64,000 nt of DNA, taken from the NCBI RefSeq assembly GCF_036588685.1, contig NW_026963302.1, positions 2,108,001-2,172,000 of the forward strand, written 5' to 3'. The first letter of the stretch is position 1; each line of letters begins with the position of its first letter. The stretch is from Mytilus trossulus (Eukaryota). The notes below the pieces were generated by a model. That model was not told the origin of the DNA. It saw nothing but the letters and a program-made list of their open reading frames with translations, and did no database searches. A program made the translations under genes and the position numbers. Of the stretch, positions 411-59,603 are shown one piece after another.

Positions 411-3400
411 TAGTACGGTGACTGAGTAAGGAAAAATCGCTTATTTAAGGAGTTTAATTGTCATTCGAACTATACGGCTATAAATCACAGTATTGGTAGT
501 TCAAATGTTAAACTTAACATTTTTACTTGTCGTCAAAAAATCGTACGGTGCAATTTTCGTAAAATGGGCTTTGAAGTACGTTAGTTTACTTGAACGAAAA
601 ATTGACTAAGAAAAGGTTTAAGGTCAACATTGTAAAATAACATCCATGATATGATTTCTGTTATTATATACATTGTTATTACACCTTATTCATGTTATTT
701 TAGCGATTTCAAATAAAGTTTAGCAAAATGTATTCGTTATTAAAGAGTTTTTGTAAAAGTTTAACACTACAAATACTTTGCATTTATTAGTTTAATTTCC
801 TGATTTTTTTAACGCAAAATGTAAAATATTTAACATTTTTATGATATTTCATACATTTGGGTACCTTTATTAATCAATAGTATCAAGTTCATTTGTCTTA
901 GAAGCACTATTTCAGCAATTCAAGTCAGAAAAAATTCATAACGTTCACATGACATAGACGAAGCTCATATACAGCCTCTTATAGATACAAATACGCAACT
1001 GGTATGTGATGTATTACTTACATTTACATACTGGGATATGTTCCTTAAAGCAGTAAACATTCAGCTGTCAAATGTTAGAGCAGAACGAGAGGGAAATTGG
1101 TCTCCTCCTTGATATCGTCATCTCAAATGTAACATTATATGTTTGTAACTACCCGTACCACACAAAGGTGGATGCCAGTTTACATACTCAATATGCTTCA
1201 ATTTTCTGAGAAAATTCGATCACCTTATATATATGGCTTTTTCCTTTTTTGACATATTCCTGGACATTTTAACAGTACTATGACATGGCAACAGAAAAGA
1301 CCGTTACAAAAGCCTCAAGGGGATTAGGTGGCACTGTAGGCATAACAAATCAAAAGTCTGCACTTGTTAAGTGAACCCATACTAGACATTTAATAGAATC
1401 CATTAGTCGTGTAATGCTGAAAAGGGATGGAATTGCTGCAAATTATGCAAATTCACAAATAGAAACAAAGCCAACAGCAATCGAAAGAGACGAAGAACAA
1501 ATTATTGTCACTGTGAACCATCTAAATGATTCATGACTGATCCCTTTGGTGTGGAATCCCACACTCAATGATTTATCAATATCTCTTCTTAAATGCATGC
1601 TTCAAGACATATTCGAGGTTTTTTGCTCACAGTTGTCGAGGAAGGCTTGAACATGTCTAAACATTTTATCACTAGTGCTCTTTCTTAAGATCACAAGGAG
1701 TTTTATAGTCCAATATCAAATTCAAACATAAACCTTAAATATAAATCGGGGGAAATACTTTCAGGTCGCATAAATACATAACTTGTGATTAGATGTGCAC
1801 TGATTTCGGCAAAATGTAAAGATGATGTTATCATAGAACATGTGTTGTCGCACCCATTCCATCATCCCCTTTTCAAAATGACGGCACCATGAGAAAATCA
1901 TGCAAGTCGGATTTTGTGAAGCAATTCGAATCTAAAGTCTCTTGCGCACTTTAAACAAAAATTCCCTACCTTCCTTTATACCATCATGATGAAGCACAAC
2001 TTACATCAGATATTGTATGGCATTGGTTCAATTTATTAACGCTAAGAAAGGTAAAACATACGGCAACCTTGCAGCTGGCTATTAAAAATATATGTCCCAA
2101 TGAATTTCTATGGCGCACATAGTAGCACATGGTTTTGACCGCTACGACACGAACAACTCTTTAAGTCTGCCGAAAGGAAACGCCGCACAGAGACTACAGC
2201 TTCCATCAAAGTGTATCAGATTATAGAACAGAGAAGTATTCCTGACTGGAAAACTTTGAAAAATCCCATGAGATTCCACCTGATGTGAGCTTTACATAGT
2301 CAGAACGTTTGTTAATTCCAAAATTGTCAAAATTATTTAAACCAACACTGTTCATGGCTGTCGTAACTTTTTCAGCATGCAAGATAAGTCCTATACCCAA
2401 TGCTTTAAACTTTGACACGGAGTTTAGGAAAATGTGAAAGTGTCGAAAAACAATCATACGGACCTCTTATACAGTTGTAATTGTTCTGTGTGTTCGCTAC
2501 TATGAAAATAGGGCACATACAAGCGAGTTGTGGTTGCAGATGTGGAACATTAGCAGTGTAAATGATGGGCGGAGAATTTCACCCATTCAATAACTATGTG
2601 TTTGTCAATCAATTTGTAAACTATTGCCTGCTGCACATGTTCTTACCGGATGCGACGCACATTCGTCTCTGTTTGGAGTAGGTATACAAACTGTCTACAA
2701 GGCTTCGAAGAACACGCACGACTATTTCAGTAGTTTTTAGAGTTTCGGTAATATTGACAATGATGAAGCCCTTGTTTTGGCATGAAAGATAATTTTTAAA
2801 GGTTTATGATGAGAACTATCTCTATGTTATTGTCAGGTTACCTTCCTGCGAGAAGGCACTGAAACAGTATGTTTTACGTACTTCGTTTCAAACTACAAAT
2901 TTAGACCGCATTACACATTGCTACACCCCTATCCGATTACCTTTAGAATACGGTTGGCGAGAGTAAAATGATGCATTACACACCGTGTATTTTAAAGAGC
3001 ATATTTCAACAGAATATTTGCAGGATATTGTGTCTTCATTGAAAGGAATATCTGCAGTCATGTGTTTGTTCACTACAAAACCTTACATATCCGGGGCTTT
3101 GATCCTGTAAAGGGTCAGAATTATGTAGAAATTTCAAATCATGTTCCTTGACAATTAATCAGAAGATATAATTCTGTTGTGTGGACCTTTTTTTATTGGA
3201 ATGTTGAATTGTTACTATTTTCGAAGTATTGAGTGCTTTTTAGTTTCAATAAATTTCATTTATGATCTTATGCTAAATATGTCTTCAAGACAGTAGGATG
3301 CAGGTAAAAATAATATTTGTCATTTTTTGATGAGGTTGAATGTCAGCCCGCAAGGTTACTACTGTTATTTTAACAAAATATGTGTAGAATCTAAATAGTT

Positions 3401-34957: not shown

Positions 34958-37920
34958 TTATTAATTAACTGGAGCTTATTTGACTAAATACGAGTAAAAC
35001 TGCCAAATCGATAATTTTGTCCTATAAGGCCAATACGGATTTTTCCGTATTGGCCCGGGTTTAGCAAGCCCAATATTAGCATATTCGATTATCTCTAGAC
35101 TAATCGGTTGAAATCCCGATAACTCTAGAGAACTACGGCTAGTGTCGTCTGACAGGAGAAAATGACAACAAAACGATGGAGCAATAGCTCTATACAAAAT
35201 ATAGATGATGCGATGGATGCGTTAGTTGAAGACTATTTTCACTACGACGATTTATCTAATAGGGAGGCAGAGTACATCAAGAGAAATCTCGCGGATGTCA
35301 ATGGGGAAGGAAATTTGATTCTGGAAGAAGTTGATTCAGCGAATTTCAACTTCCCAAATGAAATTCTGCAGGACATTGAAAATGCACAGAATCATGAGAT
35401 TGACGAATCAGACAAAGAAAATAGCTCGAGTAGCAAGAGGTTTCGCTCTGTCACTGATGAAGACACTGACTCTTTTCTAGCTTTAAGTGTTAACAAGAAC
35501 ACAAAAACTAAAACAAAGAGTGACTTGAAAGTGATGCTGGATTTTTTCATATCTGTTGGAGAAATGCGTGATTCAGTGGAAATACCTGCCAAAGACTTAG
35601 ACAGTCTGTTATCAAGATTTTTTCTTGGAGTCCTGAAGAAAAATGGTGACGAATATGAGCCTGACTCTTTATCCTCTATGTTCAACAGCTTGGATAGACA
35701 TTTGAAGGACTCAAAAAGTAGTATAAGGTACGATTATTTTCATGTAGATTATTTGATATCTGTGAGACATGTAACTCCCTTGTCTTGATATAGCATGATA
35801 GCCTTTGCATTATTCTGTCAAGCATTATGACTCGAATATTCAGTGCCAATATTTTAATTTTAGCCTTGTGTCATTTTTTTGGGTAAAAACTATATATATC
35901 ATCTGGGTCAATGTGGTTTTGATGAACTTAAGCTTGTGTACAATGAATATTCCTTGGTTTCTCTTTGCTATAAGTATAAAACATGTACATACAAAAATTA
36001 CATGTCAGATATTATGCATATCTTTTCTTTAATGTTTCAGTATTAAAAAGGATCCTGAGTTCAACCACACAAGACGGGTATTAGAAGCGAAGCGAAAGGC
36101 ATTAAAGTCATTGGGCAAGGGCAGTAAGCCAAACAGAGCTGAACCTTTGACGACTGAGGAAATCCAAATCTTGAGGGAGAAAGGCGTTATTGGAACACGT
36201 AAGTTTTAAAAAAATGTTGTATTCCAGCGTGTCAGTCAGTAACTTTTAATTACACATTTTTCTAACCTTGTGGCAAACAAATTATTTTATTTCCTTGTCG
36301 CCCTCTATCCATCCCTGATTATTAAATGGTTGTTCTAATAAAAAATGTTTAAAATACACATAAGGTCTTGAACAATGAGAGTGTCTCCAGAGGTCTTTTG
36401 CATTTTGATACAGTATTTGTCCTTTAAATACTATTTTAAGTTGGATATTTACATTAAGATACATGTATTTTAGTTAAGTTCTTTTTTTTTCTTTTTCCAG
36501 AAAACCCTGATGCATTACTGAATGCTGTGTTTTTAAATAATGCAACATACTTTGGTCTACGAGGTCGACAAGACCATGTTAACATGACATGGGGAGATGT
36601 CAAGTTAAAAGCTACATCTGATGGAAAGGAGTATTTGGAATTTAATGGTGAGATTATGTTATGATTTCCATCATTTAAATAGTTGATATTTTAAATCTTT
36701 TAGAAATCACAGAATATATACTTCTGTGGATAATGGATGTACATGTACAACAGTCCTGACAAAAGTTGGTAATTTGTGCTTTTAAGGATATTAACCATTG
36801 TTTTATATTTATCAAAACAAATCTTATTTACTATGCAATACATGTTTTTTGTTATATAAAAGTGAAAGTTTTGTACAGACAGGAAGGATAATTCTTCTTT
36901 AAATATTGACATAAGCATACTTTTTTCAGAAAGAAGCACCAAAACCCGTAGTGGAGCAAAAAGCAGGGATTTCCGGGATATTACGCCAAAGATTTTCGGG
37001 GAAGGAGGAAGTAATTGCCCTATTCATGTTTACAAGGAATACAAACGGCATAGACCTCAAGACACATTAACTGATGAACATAGATTTTATTTGAGGCCTT
37101 TAGATAATAAACATGAGGAAATATGGTACACTCGCTAAACCATAGGCAAAGATAAATTAGGTAAAATGGTAAAAAATATGGCAGAAAAAGGAGATCTTCA
37201 AGGAAGAAAGGTTAATCATTCGGGACGTAAAACTTTTGCTACCACACTACTTCAAAATGGTAGACCTGCCAATGAAGTTGCTCAATTAGGAGGCTGGAAA
37301 GGCATTAGTACCTTAACTCATTATTCAGTACCGTCTATTGAACAACAGCAACAAGCTTCTCACACAATATCTAAGGTCATGTTGCCGAACTCAGATTTAC
37401 AGACGACATCAGATTCAGAGGAACCTTGTGAACTTTCAAACTCAAATACATTAGTTCATAATAATTTAAATGCAAATGTATCAAATACAAATAATCAAAC
37501 TGCTAACAAACATGACAACCCAATGGCCATGTTTGCAGGTGCAACTATAACAGGTGGTGTTTTCAATATTAACATATACTCAGGGGAAAGAAAGAATACT
37601 ATAAACTGCAGCCAAGAGCTTTAATCTGAAAACTAGATAAAAACATGTTTTTTACTTGTTGTGTTTATTTACTGTTGATTATTTAATAAAATTGTTACTA
37701 TCTTATTGTTTTGATTAAAATCCTCAATTTTCATTGATACATATTCAAATCACTACTATTGAAGTCCTGAATGTCAGATTTTCACACTATTTTCAATTTT
37801 CATATTGGCCCGGCTAGAGTTCATATTGGACTGGTTAATTAATAAAGGTATCATTGCGTAACAATTTTCATATTGGCTTAGTTATAGGTCCGAGGGTACC
37901 ATATTGGCCTGAGGCGAAGC
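34958..37920 (+). mobile_element. Crypton-type tyrosine-recombinase element, copy 1 (nonsense mutation; terminal hairpin inverted and truncated)
   Basis: 34958-37891 matches 37959-40892; begins TTATTAATTAAC; ends in half of the terminal hairpin. Confidence 0.88.
35162..37624 (+). pseudogene. Crypton tyrosine recombinase (DUF3504-like) with premature TAA in exon 4
   Basis: Exons 35162-35727, 36041-36198, 36501-36647, 36930-37624 with GT..AG introns; TAA at 37136-37138 where copy 2 has CAA; predicts a 359-aa product. Confidence 0.88.
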
Positions 37921-38162
37921 TTCCTCCTTCCCCGAAAATTATTGACATAAGCATACTTTTATTAATTAACTGGAGCTTATTTGACTAAATACGAGTAAAA
38001 CTGCCAAATCGATAATTTTGTCCTATAAGGCCAATACGGATTTTTCCGTATTGGCCCGGGTTTAGCAAGCCCAATATTAGCATATTCGATTATCTCTAGA
38101 CTAATCGGTTGAAATCCCGATAACTCTAGAGAACTACGGCTAGTGTCGTCTGACAGGAGAAA

Positions 38163-40625
38163 ATGACAACAAAACGATGGAGCAATAGCTCTATACAAAA
38201 TATAGATGATGCGATGGATGCGTTAGTTGAAGACTATTTTCACTACGACGATTTATCTAATAGGGAGGCAGAGTACATCAAGAGAAATCTCGCGGATGTC
38301 AATGGGGAAGGAAATTTGATTCTGGAAGAAGTTGATTCAGCGAATTTCAACTTCCCAAATGAAATTCTGCAGGACATTGAAAATGCACAGAATCATGAGA
38401 TTGACGAATCAGACAAAGAAAATAGCTCGAGTAGCAAGAGGTTTCGCTCTGTCACTGATGAAGACACTGACTCTTTTCTAGCTTTAAGTGTTAACAAGAA
38501 CACAAAAACTAAAACAAAGAGTGACTTGAAAGTGATGCTGGATTTTTTCATATCTGTTGGAGAAATGCGTGATTCAGTGGAAATACCTGCCAAAGACTTA
38601 GACAGTCTGTTATCAAGATTTTTTCTTGGAGTCCTGAAGAAAAATGGTGACGAATATGAGCCTGACTCTTTATCCTCTATGTTCAACAGCTTGGATAGAC
38701 ATTTGAAGGACTCAAAAAGTAGTATAAGGTACGATTATTTTCATGTAGATTATTTGATATCTGTGAGACATGTAACTCCCTTGTCTTGATATAGCATGAT
38801 AGCCTTTGCATTATTCTGTCAAGCATTATGACTCGAATATTCAGTGCCAATATTTTAATTTTAGCCTTGTGTCATTTTTTTGGGTAAAAACTATATATAT
38901 CATCTGGGTCAATGTGGTTTTGATGAACTTAAGCTTGTGTACAATGAATATTCCTTGGTTTCTCTTTGCTATAAGTATAAAACATGTACATACAAAAATT
39001 ACATGTCAGATATTATGCATATCTTTTCTTTAATGTTTCAGTATTAAAAAGGATCCTGAGTTCAACCACACAAGACGGGTATTAGAAGCGAAGCGAAAGG
39101 CATTAAAGTCATTGGGCAAGGGCAGTAAGCCAAACAGAGCTGAACCTTTGACGACTGAGGAAATCCAAATCTTGAGGGAGAAAGGCGTTATTGGAACACG
39201 TAAGTTTTAAAAAAATGTTGTATTCCAGCGTGTCAGTCAGTAACTTTTAATTACACATTTTTCTAACCTTGTGGCAAACAAATTATTTTATTTCCTTGTC
39301 GCCCTCTATCCATCCCTGATTATTAAATGGTTGTTCTAATAAAAAATGTTTAAAATACACATAAGGTCTTGAACAATGAGAGTGTCTCCAGAGGTCTTTT
39401 GCATTTTGATACAGTATTTGTCCTTTAAATACTATTTTAAGTTGGATATTTACATTAAGATACATGTATTTTAGTTAAGTTCTTTTTTTTTCTTTTTCCA
39501 GAAAACCCTGATGCATTACTGAATGCTGTGTTTTTAAATAATGCAACATACTTTGGTCTACGAGGTCGACAAGACCATGTTAACATGACATGGGGAGATG
39601 TCAAGTTAAAAGCTACATCTGATGGAAAGGAGTATTTGGAATTTAATGGTGAGATTATGTTATGATTTCCATCATTTAAATAGTTGATATTTTAAATCTT
39701 TTAGAAATCACAGAATATATACTTCTGTGGATAATGGATGTACATGTACAACAGTCCTGACAAAAGTTGGTAATTTGTGCTTTTAAGGATATTAACCATT
39801 GTTTTATATTTATCAAAACAAATCTTATTTACTATGCAATACATGTTTTTTGTTATATAAAAGTGAAAGTTTTGTACAGACAGGAAGGATAATTCTTCTT
39901 TAAATATTGACATAAGCATACTTTTTTCAGAAAGAAGCACCAAAACCCGTAGTGGAGCAAAAAGCAGGGATTTCCGGGATATTACGCCAAAGATTTTCGG
40001 GGAAGGAGGAAGTAATTGCCCTATTCATGTTTACAAGGAATACAAACGGCATAGACCTCAAGACACATTAACTGATGAACATAGATTTTATTTGAGGCCT
40101 TTAGATAATAAACATGAGGAAATATGGTACACTCGCCAAACCATAGGCAAAGATAAATTAGGTAAAATGGTAAAAAATATGGCAGAAAAAGGAGATCTTC
40201 AAGGAAGAAAGGTTAATCATTCGGGACGTAAAACTTTTGCTACCACACTACTTCAAAATGGTAGACCTGCCAATGAAGTTGCTCAATTAGGAGGCTGGAA
40301 AGGCATTAGTACCTTAACTCATTATTCAGTACCGTCTATTGAACAACAGCAACAAGCTTCTCACACAATATCTAAGGTCATGTTGCCGAACTCAGATTTA
40401 CAGACGACATCAGATTCAGAGGAACCTTGTGAACTTTCAAACTCAAATACATTAGTTCATAATAATTTAAATGCAAATGTATCAAATACAAATAATCAAA
40501 CTGCTAACAAACATGACAACCCAATGGCCATGTTTGCAGGTGCAACTATAACAGGTGGTGTTTTCAATATTAACATATACTCAGGGGAAAGAAAGAATAC
40601 TATAAACTGCAGCCAAGAGCTTTAA
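38163..40625 (+). CDS. Crypton tyrosine recombinase, 521 aa, four exons
   Basis: Exons 38163-38728, 39042-39199, 39502-39648, 39931-40625 join in frame (1566 nt). Motifs KKNGDEYEPDSL, LEAKRKALKSLGKGSKPNRA, FGLR262GRQDH, STK295TRSG, CPIHVYKEY, NH387SGR390KT, GGW413K, TLTHY422. Confidence 0.92.
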
Positions 40626-40847
40626 TCTGAAAACTAGATAAAAACATGTTTTTTACTTGTTGTGTTTATTTACTGTTGATTATTTAATAAAATTGTTACT
40701 ATCTTATTGTTTTGATTAAAATCCTCAATTTTCATTGATACATATTCAAATCACTACTATTGAAGTCCTGAATGTCAGATTTTCACACTATTTTCAATTT
40801 TCATATTGGCCCGGCTAGAGTTCATATTGGACTGGTTAATTAATAAA

Positions 40848-40989
40848 GGTATCATTGCGTAACAATTTTCATATTGGCTTAGTTATAGGTCCTCGGGCAG
40901 CCATATTGGCCTTCGGCTTCGCCTCAGGCCAATATGGTACCCTCGGACCTATAACTAAGCCAATATGAAAATTGTTACGCAATAATACC
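40848..40989. repeat. 142-bp imperfect palindrome (terminal hairpin) of the Crypton element
   Basis: 45-bp outer stem 40848-40892/40945-40989 (1 mismatch), asymmetric bubble, 12-bp inner stem 40901-40912/40926-40937, tip TC-GGC-TTC-GCC-TC. Confidence 0.97.
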
Positions 40990-41969
40990 ATATTAATGAT
41001 TGATTTACGGTTAGTTACATAACTCCAGTCAAAACAAGTTGAACAATATTTTTTGATGCAGATGTTCATTGATGCATGAGATGTGCATAGATGTATAAGA
41101 TGTGCAGACAGCTGTGCAGGTGTAAAATGATTTTTTAACTTTAACTTTGAATAAGGCGCGGAAGATTAATTTTATCAAATTTGTTACTGTATACAATATT
41201 TTGCCATTTTTAAACTATCGCCTTAAACTCAAGTGCAACTGTTCTTCTGGTCAATATTATATTTGATAAAGTATCGCGTATCAGTGTAAAATTTTACCTT
41301 GAACTGATATGGCAGTGTTATCTATTACTTTTTACAAAACATTATTTGACAAGGTGAATGACATACTTAGTTAAACAGTTATGATGACTGCTGGCGAAAT
41401 ATAGAACACATAATTATAGTGCATTTCTAGAGAAGAATACTCAGTTTGGATAACATCACAAAATTGTAAATACGTAAGAAAACTTTATTAATTCTAATAT
41501 ACGCTTGTTTAACCCTATTAAACATGTGAATGGGTGGACGTGAAGTAAATAAGCTTTAAACTTTAGCATGGGAACTAACAAAATGGAAGGATGCATGTGT
41601 CCGACTAGACACACAGTATCGTTATGTTGATTAATATATTATAATGCGCACACGTTTTTTTTTTTGCCATGTGCTTTTATTATCTGTTGTGTTTGAAGGA
41701 CAAGTGGTTGTCAAAACCGTTAAAGTTGCAGCTATTTAATGCAATAATAATATTTTTGACTTTTTATGTGTGTGCAAAACAAATACCCTTTAAAAACAAA
41801 CGAAATTTCCATTGTCATCTGTATGCTAATTTACAGAGAGTAACTCATACAATATAGAACTTAGAATAGGAATTTTACATAATAATTATGAAACAAGGCA
41901 TGTGAACTGATTGTCGGCGTATATATTATTTTACGTCTATTTTAAAACAGTCAGGTTTTGGAAGTTGCA

Positions 41970-42236
41970 TTGATCTGTAGTACTTCTTGTATTGTTGGTA
42001 GTTTGTATGATCTATTGTATTATCTAATATATTTAGTAGTTGGTGTGATCTATTATTTTGTCTAATATTTTTGGTAGTTATTTTGATCTATATTGTATTG
42101 TTCAATATTTTTGGTAGTTAGTGTGATCAATAATATTGTTTCACATTTTGGTGGTTGTTATGCTTTATTGTACTGTCTACTATTTTTGGTAGTTGGAATG
42201 ATCGATTAAACTGTCTAAAATTTTTAGTAGTTGGAT
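41970..42236. repeat. Degenerate ~41-bp tandem repeat, resuming at 45749-45820 after the inserted transposon
   Basis: Recurring ttggtagttg..tgatctattgta.tgtctaatatt unit on both sides of the insertion. Confidence 0.75.
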
Positions 42237-54957: not shown

Positions 54958-56016
54958 TTATGATGGTTTACACCCATCTACAGATGATTTTGAATATCTG
55001 GATTTAGTCGACATATTTGATGCTTTCGAAAGTCTTCCAGACAATGAACCTGTTTCTGTCGAGTTCTTTATGGGAGTGCGTGTTTCGGGTCTTTTACTGA
55101 TCTGGGTTGTCGGACGACTGTTTATCAGTGGAAGTGTATAATTATCCTTTTTGATCTTTTGTTCACTCGAAAGATGGTTAAATGGATCAAGCGTTGTTGT
55201 TAATGTTCCTAAAGTTGTCAAATAAGATTCTTGATTTTTCGGATGGATATATAAAATATTTATATCTTTAAAAGAATGTATTAGTACTTTGATTTGTTTT
55301 CTTTCTTCAGTGGTGGACGATTTCAAATTATGAAGTGTAATAAAAACTTGGCTATTGGACCCGTATTCATTTACAAAATCTAGCTCCGTTTTATGCTCAT
55401 TAACTTTTTCGATCAACCCCGAAATCTTTTCCTCCTGCTTTTCAATGTTTGACGATTTCAAAAGATGCACAGTTGATAATTCTGATAGCAATGCATGCTC
55501 TAATGCTTCAAGGCGATCAATAATGTTTTGCTTAATTGCCGCAATAGATTTCTGTATATCGTCCTTTTGCTTGTCTAGTCTTTTTAAATTTTCGGTTCGG
55601 TTCTGTGTTATTTTTTTCAATAATTGAATATCTTCTTCCATATCTTTAGTCAGTGTCTGTAACATAGGCGATTGTTTGATCCCCTTAGCTACAGTATCTA
55701 ATGACTGCATTCTATCACACCCTCGGTGTTTTTCCGTCATGCATGATCGACAACACAGGGCATCATGGTATGCACAGTACAGATCTACAATTAAATCAGA
55801 GTGCAAAGGACAATACTTTTGAGCGGTTAAATTTGAGGATACCTCTGGCGGCATATCTTCATTTTTCTTTAGTGTATGAGACAGAGTAATTTTATTTATT
55901 CGATGCGCTTTATTACAGTTCTGGCATAATGATTCCATACAGTCACAACACCAGCTTACTGCTTCTGATGAAGTCTTTTCTCTTTGACAAGGTTCACAAA
56001 ACGGAATTGAAGACAT
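54958..56016 (-). CDS. RING-less B-box1/B-box2/coiled-coil TRIM-like protein with Ser/Thr/Lys-rich tail (352 aa)
   Basis: CEPC..WCCDCMESLCQNCNKAH..H and CPLH..YCAYHDALCCRSCMTEKHRGC; coiled coil; acceptor tttttgtag 9 nt before the ATG. Confidence 0.88.
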   Translation of the reverse strand: MSSIPFCEPCQREKTSSEAVSWCCDCMESLCQNCNKAHRINKITLSHTLKKNEDMPPEVSSNLTAQKYCPLHSDLIVDLYCAYHDALCCRSCMTEKHRGCDRMQSLDTVAKGIKQSPMLQTLTKDMEEDIQLLKKITQNRTENLKRLDKQKDDIQKSIAAIKQNIIDRLEALEHALLSELSTVHLLKSSNIEKQEEKISGLIEKVNEHKTELDFVNEYGSNSQVFITLHNLKSSTTEERKQIKVLIHSFKDINILYIHPKNQESYLTTLGTLTTTLDPFNHLSSEQKIKKDNYTLPLINSRPTTQISKRPETRTPIKNSTETGSLSGRLSKASNMSTKSRYSKSSVDGCKPS

Positions 56017-59460: not shown

Positions 59461-59603
59461 TAACAACTGTTTAGTGTCTTTAAATATCAGCTGTATTTGT
59501 ACTCGGCACGAAACAGGTGTAATAGCTCGCTAAAAGCTCGCATACACCTTGTTTCTTAGCCTCTTACAAATGCAGCTGATTTAAAGACACTAAACAGTTA
59601 TTA
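59461..59603. repeat. 143-bp imperfect palindrome, candidate non-autonomous Crypton-type hairpin
   Basis: Arms aactgtttagtgtctttaa-atcagctgtatttgta-ggc-gaaaca-ggtgta pair with tacacc-tgtttc-gcc-tacaaatgcagctgat-ttaaagacactaaacagtt; tip GC-TC-GCT-AAA-AGC-TC-GC. Confidence 0.85.

What the first reader, a model, noticed from the sequence alone, without database searches (positions are those of the whole stretch)
37847..40989. Flip/flop isomers of a terminal hairpin in a Crypton-type tyrosine-recombinase element
Seen: the two copies are the same up to GGTCC (37891/40892). Copy 2 continues TCGGGCAG-CCATATTGGCCT-TCGGCTTCGCCTC-AGGCCAATATGG-TACCCTC-GGACC. Copy 1 continues GAGGGTA-CCATATTGGCCT-GAGGCGAAGC, the exact reverse complement of the right half of copy 2's hairpin interior. 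Copy 1 still has the left-arm diagnostic base in the outer stem (GGTATCATT, not GGTATTATT), so only the interior is inverted, with the switch inside the 39-bp perfect stem. Established: flip/flop isomers of imperfect terminal palindromes mark hairpin-transfer replication (AAV/parvovirus ITRs, poxvirus telomeres), and YR-fold enzymes such as TelN and ResT process hairpin ends. Cryptons are usually modelled as simple circular excision/integration elements. Inference: this element may move through a hairpin-ended or folded single-stranded intermediate processed by its own recombinase, a mechanism I do not know to be described for Cryptons.
Basis: partly seen in the sequence, partly recalled or inferred. 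Interest (0 to 1): 0.93.

Follow-up and report, generated by a model that had tools for sequence, protein, structure and literature searches.

The report
Repair scar, not flip/flop hairpin
The "flipped" hairpin copy is a broken, patched half-hairpin at the joint of two tandem copies of a mussel Crypton transposon, but the intact hairpin has a conserved one-strand-biased design that suggests a folded single-strand recombination site.

Summary
It is the left arm plus 29 nt copied from the opposite strand, with no right arm, and it does not fold.

It sits at the internal joint of a very recent head-to-tail dimer of a 3.03-kb intron-bearing Crypton in a Mytilus genome. The two copies differ at 1 of 2934 nt. 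After the 29 nt come two exact templated patches from inside the element, then the exact 5' end of copy B.

Genome-wide, all 15 complete hairpins of this family have the same orientation relative to the gene. No complete flip exists. One other locus has the same left-side switch, again truncated at the tip. Flip/flop by hairpin transfer is therefore not supported.

A separate result is more interesting:
- Relatives with 47% and 31% protein identity keep the same hairpin design.
- Every imperfection is a G.A or G.T pair, plus a C-GAA-G tip, on the strand antisense to the recombinase gene.
- The element's 5' end is complementary to the bases just left of the hairpin, so the crossover lies in a stem that forms only when the ends are joined. 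This topology resembles integron attC.

Other windows of this genome carry earlier notes of Cryptons with one-sided ~160-bp terminal hairpins. Read-level checks were not possible.

The parts
34958..37891 (+). Crypton copy A: exact 5' end to the end of the left hairpin arm. The 3' hairpin is truncated. Carries a stop codon (T at 37136 where copy B has C at 40137).
37847..37891 (+). Left hairpin arm of copy A (45 nt, with the C diagnostic at 37852), identical to 40848-40892.
37892..37920 (+). Strand-switched ('flipped') segment: exact reverse complement of 40916-40944. It ends right after the GCGAAGC motif.
37920..37939 (+). Templated patch 1: exact reverse complement of exon sequence 39993-40012 (1-nt overlap with the previous segment).
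   Evidence: (I3/I4)
37940..37960 (+). Templated patch 2: exact direct copy of intron sequence 39905-39925 (2-nt overlap with the 5' end of copy B).
   Evidence: (D7)
37959..40992 (+). Crypton copy B, complete (about 3034 bp): 5' end TTATTAATTAAC, 3' end ...ACCATA.
37959..37970 (+). 5'-terminal 12-mer, the exact reverse complement of 40836-40847.
38029..38056 (.). 5' subterminal palindrome carrying the GGCCAATA motif. A counterpart lies in L050 at 1652-1710.
   Evidence: (D4)
38163..40625 (+). Recombinase gene, 521 aa, 4 exons (38163-38728, 39042-39199, 39502-39648, 39931-40625). Carries QRICH1, DUF3504 and Phage_integrase domains.
40800..40885 (+). Three direct TTCATATTGG-type motifs leading into the hairpin. 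The same core is repeated in the arms and the inner stem.
   Evidence: D4, D5
40836..40847 (+). Left extension: 12 nt complementary to the element's 5' end. It lengthens the stem only when the ends are joined.
40848..40989 (.). Complete 142-nt 3' hairpin: 45-nt arms, TC/TC tandem mismatch, GGG/CCC, 12-bp inner stem, second TC/TC, and GGC-TTC-GCC tip on the sense strand. On the antisense strand these read as GA/GA pairs and a GCGAAGC tip.
40990..40992 (+). Terminal ATA, next to the crossover point with the flank.

Best explanation
Copy 1 is a rearrangement scar, not a replication isomer.

A ~3.03-kb intron-bearing DUF3504 Crypton of a Mytilus genome is present here as a very recent head-to-tail dimer. 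At the internal joint, the 3' hairpin of copy A was broken or replication stalled there. Within the 39-bp perfect part of the stem, the growing or joined strand switched to the complementary strand. That produced 29 nt of 'flipped' interior, ending just after the self-folding GCGAAGC motif at the tip.

The end was then extended on two short templates about 0.9-1.0 kb upstream in the element, one inverted and one direct, using 1-2 nt microhomologies. It was finally joined to the exact 5' end of copy B.

This is the known behaviour of long quasi-palindromes. Either replication switches template, or the cruciform is resolved into a hairpin-capped end that is opened near the tip; joining with templated filler follows. 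The intact hairpin has one fixed orientation in the family.

Shown: the anatomy, the copy counts and the fixed orientation. Inferred: the order of events and which enzymes acted.
For: - Dimer: period 3001 nt, and A and B differ at 1 of 2934 positions.
- Junction: it resolves completely into four exact pieces with 1-2 nt overlaps. These are rc 40916-40951, rc 39993-40012, direct 39905-39925, then the 5' terminus.
- Copy 1 does not fold.
- All 15 complete hairpins share one orientation. In the 11 exact pattern hits, the TC..TC strand is always the strand of the element.
- There are 0 hits for the right junction of a complete flip.
- The left-flip with the C diagnostic occurs at only two loci. 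Both are truncated at or near the tip and have different continuations.
- Those two loci are not sister copies: 10 differences in 1499 nt and no shared private variants.
- Other hairpin-internal accidents occur in the family. Two copies have the left TC changed to GA, matching the other arm, and one has an internal deletion (L018).
- Palindrome fragility, hairpin-capped breaks and template switching are established (PMC7999016, PMC3855049, PMC8053094).
- GCGAAGC forms an exceptionally stable DNA mini-hairpin and pauses polymerases (PMC13037366).
Against: - The partner end is the exact 5' terminus of the element (within 0-2 nt). A purely random break-and-join would not predict this. It suggests recombinase cleavage, or a stall at the hairpin of a circular or tandem template.
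- The same strand switch occurs at two independent loci. That hints at a systematic process, though a deterministic switch in a 39-bp perfect stem also explains it.
- No reads could be examined, so the junction rests on the assembly alone.
Confidence: 0.75

Rival explanations
1. True flip/flop: the element replicates or moves through a hairpin-primed, hairpin-transfer step (parvovirus-like). This step inverts the interior of the terminal palindrome, and copy 1 is the flip isomer.
For: The interior is inverted while the outer-stem diagnostic base is kept, as a nick inside the stem would give. A second locus has the same left-side inversion. In a distant family, two contigs (L058, L060) have the apex inverted relative to L053 and L061.
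Against: No complete flipped hairpin exists: 0 of 15 complete copies, and 0 pattern hits for the right junction. Both 'flips' lack the right half entirely. Templated filler follows copy 1. Polarity relative to the gene is conserved across families at 47% and 31% protein identity. The element encodes no HUH nickase, only the tyrosine recombinase.
Confidence: 0.04
2. Recombinase-made break: the element's own tyrosine recombinase acts on the extruded cruciform, which is a four-way junction. It resolves it inside the stem into hairpin-capped ends, as a telomere resolvase does. It also cuts at the 5' crossover. Host end-joining then links the opened cap to the cut 5' end, producing the dimer. The flipped segment is the antisense-strand cap.
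For: Resolution inside the perfect stem predicts exactly what is seen: the left-arm diagnostic kept, the interior flipped, and truncation near the tip after cap opening. The partner end is the exact 5' terminus, where the recombinase is expected to cut. The arms carry repeated ATATTGGCC-type motifs that could be protein binding sites.
Against: Host resolvases or replication template switching give the same product. There is no protelomerase-type domain, only DUF3504 and Phage_integrase. Only two events are seen and no biochemistry is available.
Confidence: 0.13
3. Assembly artefact: the copy A / copy B junction, or the whole dimer, is a mis-join of reads at a palindrome.
For: A and B are almost identical. 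Palindromes trouble sequencing chemistry (PMC13037366).
Against: The junction is a structured mosaic of exact local templates, not a simple collapse or chimera. A and B differ at one base, and both outer flanks are normal insertion junctions. An independent locus on another contig shows the same kind of truncated switch.
Confidence: 0.07

Closest known systems
Crypton DNA transposons (DUF3504-bearing animal Cryptons; Kojima and Jurka 2011, PMC3212892)
   Same: Single tyrosine-recombinase gene with introns and no reverse transcriptase. No terminal inverted repeats. Short, variable direct repeats at the ends (0-11 bp here, mostly 4-7). Carries DUF3504/QRICH1-type domains.
   Different: The papers I could read describe Cryptons as lacking terminal structure and do not mention a hairpin. 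Here a 142-nt subterminal hairpin abuts the 3' crossover, and the 5' end is complementary to the bases left of it.
Parvovirus/AAV ITR flip/flop (hairpin transfer)
   Same: An imperfect terminal palindrome whose interior could in principle be inverted while the outer stem is kept.
   Different: Both complete orientations are expected at similar frequency, but here it is 15 to 0. The 'flip' is only a truncated half, there is no HUH Rep nickase, and the element is integrated and circular-type rather than a linear genome end.
Palindrome/quasi-palindrome instability (template switching; cruciform resolution to hairpin-capped breaks; centre-break rearrangements; PMC7999016, PMC3855049, PMC8053094)
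   Same: Breakpoints at the palindrome tip, a strand switch within the stem, correction of mismatches toward the other arm, internal deletions, and microhomology with templated filler at the joint.
   Different: The other partner of the joint is an exact transposon terminus, which suggests the element's own machinery or its circular form took part.
Integron attC sites (and CTX phage attP(+)): folded single-strand substrates of tyrosine recombinases (PMC2727003, PMC3458562)
   Same: An imperfect palindrome kept at the 3' end of the mobile unit, while the last part of its outer stem lies at the unit's 5' end, so the crossover is inside the stem. An internal loop sits next to the crossover, and the unpaired features differ between strands.
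   Different: Eukaryotic host, and the recombinase is carried by the unit itself. The stem is much longer, and polarity is set by G.A and G.T pairs and a GAA tip rather than by extrahelical bases. Single-strand recombination is untested.
DIRS retrotransposon internal complementary region (ICR)
   Same: An internal stretch complementary to the joined ends of the element could act as a splint for circle formation. An earlier scan note, s1-818550, used this wording for another Crypton in this genome.
   Different: No reverse transcriptase, and introns are retained in the gene, so an RNA intermediate is unlikely.

Membership tests
Crypton (tyrosine-recombinase DNA transposon) | Encodes a tyrosine recombinase with the R..HxxR..(H/W)..Y catalytic set | tested here: met
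   Phage_integrase and DUF3504 hits above cut-off on exon 4. The motifs GLRGR, NHSGRK and GGW...THY are visible in the exon translations.
Crypton (tyrosine-recombinase DNA transposon) | No reverse transcriptase or other transposase; DNA element (introns kept) | tested here: met
   The 3.03-kb unit holds one 4-exon gene. No other homologues were found in the window.
Crypton (tyrosine-recombinase DNA transposon) | No terminal inverted or long direct repeats; short direct repeats at the ends | tested here: met
   The 5' flanks of 16 copies are unrelated to the hairpin. End/flank overlaps are 0-11 bp, mostly 4-7. The definition is from PMC3212892.
Crypton (tyrosine-recombinase DNA transposon) | Multiple near-identical copies at unrelated loci (mobility) | tested here: met
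   About 17 loci at 97-100% identity, including internally deleted copies.
Flip/flop terminal palindrome (hairpin-transfer replication, parvovirus type) | Both complete orientations of the palindrome present at comparable frequency | tested here: not met
   15 complete copies have one orientation and 0 have the other.
Flip/flop terminal palindrome (hairpin-transfer replication, parvovirus type) | The inverted form is a complete, foldable palindrome | tested here: not met
   Copy 1 and the C14 locus lack the right half. Copy 1 does not fold.
Flip/flop terminal palindrome (hairpin-transfer replication, parvovirus type) | Site-specific nickase (HUH Rep) acting in the stem | tested here: not met
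   Only tyrosine-recombinase domains were found.
Telomere resolvase systems (TelN, ResT) | Protelomerase-type enzyme, and a palindromic target cut symmetrically about its centre to give hairpin ends | tested here: inconclusive
   No protelomerase family hit was found. Breakpoints lie near the tip at two loci, but hairpin-ended molecules cannot be observed with these tools.
attC-like folded single-strand recombination site | Crossover inside the outer stem, so the distal part of one arm lies at the other end of the integrated unit | tested here: met
   Window 37959-37970 is the reverse complement of 40836-40847. In L050, 1572-1594 is the reverse complement of the 23 nt just left of its hairpin.
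attC-like folded single-strand recombination site | Structure conserved while sequence is not; the two strands distinguished by unpaired features | tested here: met
   Mytilus and L050 hairpins are both 142 nt with 32% nucleotide identity. Of 63 pairs, 38 changed on both sides yet still pair. Every strand-asymmetric mismatch reads G.A or G.T on the antisense strand in Mytilus (6 of 6) and L050 (5 of 5), and 8 of 9 do in L053.
attC-like folded single-strand recombination site | Recombinase binds and cleaves only the folded strand; junction resolved by replication | not testable with these tools
   Needs biochemistry or in vivo assays.

The most novel reading that the evidence does not exclude
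The 3' hairpin of these marine-invertebrate DUF3504 Cryptons is a recombination site that works as a folded single strand, the strand antisense to the recombinase gene. Its complete stem, with the crossover inside it, exists only once the two element ends are joined. This would be a eukaryotic counterpart of integron attC or CTX attP(+) recombination, or alternatively a DIRS-ICR-like splint for circle closure. The truncated 'flips' would then be by-products of recombinase or nuclease action on the extruded structure.
Probability: 0.4. Interest if true: 0.8.

Novelty: new variant of a known kind. Interest (0 to 1): 0.55.

Why it matters
As posed, the finding would have been a new replication mode for Cryptons, and the copy census rules that out.

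What remains is useful in two ways.

1. It is a clean natural example of how a long quasi-palindrome breaks at its tip and is patched with templated snippets. The imperfect interior makes the strand switch visible.

2. How Cryptons transpose has never been shown experimentally, and the papers read here describe them as having no terminal structure. This work found a hairpin of conserved geometry: 142 nt in two families, and a G.T mismatch exactly 39 bp outside the first tandem G.A. Its polarity is conserved, and the crossover lies in its stem. That gives a concrete, testable model of the recombination site, and possibly the first eukaryotic tyrosine recombinase that uses a folded single strand.

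Tried and rejected
- 74-bp terminal inverted repeat reading (37847-37920 versus 40916-40989, I1). Rejected, because the left 'repeat' belongs to copy A and no single-copy insertion has it.
- Known RNA family or miRNA precursor. Only far sub-threshold Rfam hits (30 bits against a cut-off of 200).
- Ordinary nearest-neighbour folding as a test of strand bias. The difference is only about 2-3 kcal/mol, and the model does not score tandem G.A pairs or the GAA mini-hairpin, so this test is weak on its own.
- Fetching the roughly 22 more divergent hairpin hits of this genome.
Metagenome contigs were used instead.
- L051 and L052 (45% and 38% identity relatives). No comparable hairpin was found within the contig, so the feature may not be universal.
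- Linking the second hairpin at 59461-59603 to a recombinase gene. None is present in the window.
Full report
**Observation.** The quoted letters are correct. Sequences 37700-37891 and 40701-40892 are identical.
- At 40848-40989 there is a complete 142-nt hairpin. It has 45-nt arms differing at one base (C at position 6 of the left arm, opposite A). The 52-nt interior has a 12-bp inner stem.
- At 37892-37920 the sequence is instead the exact reverse complement of 40916-40944.
- After 37920 nothing of the hairpin follows. The stretch 37847-37960 does not fold (z = +1.2 and -0.1), while the real hairpin gives -63.6 and -65.9 kcal/mol, z about -18.

So 'copy 1' is a left arm plus a strand-switched half interior. 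It is not an isomer of the hairpin.

**Context.** The window holds a head-to-tail dimer with a 3001-nt period.
- Copy A is 34958-37891 and copy B is 37959-40992. They differ at 1 of 2934 positions, and that change makes a stop codon in A.
- The 67 nt between them resolve completely:
  - 37892-37920 is the reverse complement of the right interior.
  - 37920-37939 is the exact reverse complement of exon sequence 39993-40012.
  - 37940-37960 is an exact direct copy of intron sequence 39905-39925.
  - Then comes the element's exact 5' end, TTATTAATTAAC. Overlaps between pieces are 1-2 nt.
- The switched segment ends right after GCGAAGC. This motif is known to form an extraordinarily stable DNA mini-hairpin that pauses polymerases (PMC13037366).

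**The element.** The gene has 4 exons and encodes 521 aa.
- Searched exon by exon, it gives QRICH1, DUF3504 and Phage_integrase. I did not search the joined coding sequence.
- The best protein relative is a Mytilus edulis Tyr-recombinase protein at 96% identity, and many bivalve relatives follow.
- The genome is 1.3 Gb and carries about 17 loci at 97-100% identity, three of them internally deleted.
- The ends are 5' TTATTAATTAAC and 3' ...ACCATA. End/flank overlaps are 0-11 bp and there are no inverted ends. This fits the published description of Cryptons (PMC3212892).

**Census of orientation.**
- All 15 complete hairpins have the copy-2 orientation.
- An exact pattern for the interior matches 11 loci, always on the strand of the element.
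- The right-hand junction that a complete flip would need matches nowhere.
- The left flip with the C diagnostic matches two loci only: copy A and C14:4463405. At C14 the switched segment stops 2 nt into the loop and runs straight into non-element flank.
- The two loci are not sister copies.
- Two further copies have the left TC changed to GA, matching the other arm. One has a deletion inside the hairpin.

The family therefore shows recurrent accidents inside a quasi-palindrome, but one fixed orientation.

**Mechanism of the scar.** Two known routes give a left arm with its own diagnostic base, a flipped interior and truncation near the tip.
1. A nascent strand switches to the complementary strand within the perfect stem.
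2. The extruded cruciform is resolved inside the stem. This leaves an end capped by the antisense-strand hairpin, which is then opened near the tip.

Either is followed by joining with short templated extensions (PMC7999016, PMC3855049, PMC8053094). I cannot separate the two routes. The exact 5' terminus on the other side suggests one of two things: recombinase cleavage there, or a stall at the hairpin base of a circular or tandem template. Both are inference.

**A stronger lead.** Metagenome contigs encoding relatives were found.
- L050 (47% identity) has a hairpin downstream of the gene that is also 142 nt long.
  - Nucleotide identity to the Mytilus hairpin is only 32%, yet 38 of 63 pairs changed on both sides and still pair.
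  - The layout is the same: outer stem, TC/TC, GGG/CCC, a bulge, inner stem, TC/TC, and a GGCC-TTC-GGCC tip.
  - It also has a C.A mismatch exactly 39 bp outside the first tandem mismatch, as in Mytilus.
- L053 (31% identity) has the same layout with a GCGAAGC tip on the antisense strand.
- On the antisense strand, all six non-canonical oppositions of the Mytilus hairpin and all five of the L050 hairpin read G.A or G.T. In L053, 8 of the 9 strand-asymmetric oppositions do, and a tenth is C.C/G.G, neutral between strands. All three tips read C-GAA-G.
- In both Mytilus and L050, the 5' end of the element is the reverse complement of the 12 or 23 nt just left of the hairpin. A modelled joined-ends sequence therefore folds into one continuous hairpin of about 190-210 nt. 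The crossover lies in its stem, next to a small internal loop.
- This topology matches an integron cassette and its attC site, which a tyrosine recombinase recombines as a folded bottom strand (PMC2727003, PMC3458562). It also resembles a DIRS-type internal complementary region.

Exceptions:
- L058 and L060, from one metagenome, have the apex inverted relative to L053 and L061. This looks like one fixed inversion in degenerate copies.
- L051 and L052 show no such hairpin within their contigs.

**Limits.** Reads could not be examined. The junction therefore rests on the assembly. The polarity census rests on three families plus one exception.

**Verdict.**
- Flip/flop and hairpin-transfer replication are not supported.
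- The best explanation is a palindrome-tip break or template switch, patched with templated filler, at the joint of a recent Crypton dimer.
- The conserved, strand-polar hairpin with the crossover in its stem is the part worth following up.

Noticed in passing
window 59461-59603: A second ~143-nt hairpin of unrelated sequence, with TC/TC mismatches flanking GGC/GCC on the + strand (z about -12 on both strands). No recombinase homologue lies near it in the window.
   Followed up: partly
window 37136 vs 40137: The only difference between the two dimer copies turns a Gln codon (CAA, copy B) into a stop (TAA, copy A).
   Followed up: yes
L058:1155-1271 and L060:1140-1284, compared with L053:2787-2935 and L061:874-1017: Within one distant Crypton family, the apex between the 16-bp inner stems is inverted in two contigs from one metagenome. 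The outer bubble keeps its orientation in L058 and is 'corrected' to Watson-Crick pairs in L060.
   Followed up: partly
G000:C14:5750373-5750432 (L009) and L013: The left tandem mismatch TC is changed to GA, so it pairs with the right arm. This looks like quasi-palindrome correction. These copies are otherwise ordinary.
   Followed up: partly
window 38029-38056; L050:1652-1710: A 5' subterminal palindrome built on GGCCAATA lies about 70-80 nt inside the 5' end in both families. The same ATTGGCC core recurs in the hairpin arms. It could be recombinase binding sites or CCAAT-box promoter elements.
   Followed up: no
L050:744-896: Another long hairpin (56-nt arms, unrelated sequence) lies about 700 nt upstream of the L050 element's 5' end. 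It is possibly the end of a different element.
   Followed up: no
window 41985-42234: A degenerate tandem array with a period of about 38 nt, just downstream of the dimer.
   Followed up: no
window 54958-56016 (-): A 351-aa open reading frame with B-box zinc fingers (Pfam PF00643), probably an exon of a host TRIM-like gene.
   Followed up: partly
window 2272-2355 (-): A weak DUF3504-like similarity to exon 3 of the recombinase (43% over 28 aa, E 8e-4). It may be a remnant of another Crypton-derived sequence.
   Followed up: no
3' flanks of L004, L005, L009, L010, L013: Five of 15 insertions have ATAT directly after the terminal ACCATA, and six have TTAT. The target or crossover choice seems to fall into two classes.
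   Followed up: partly
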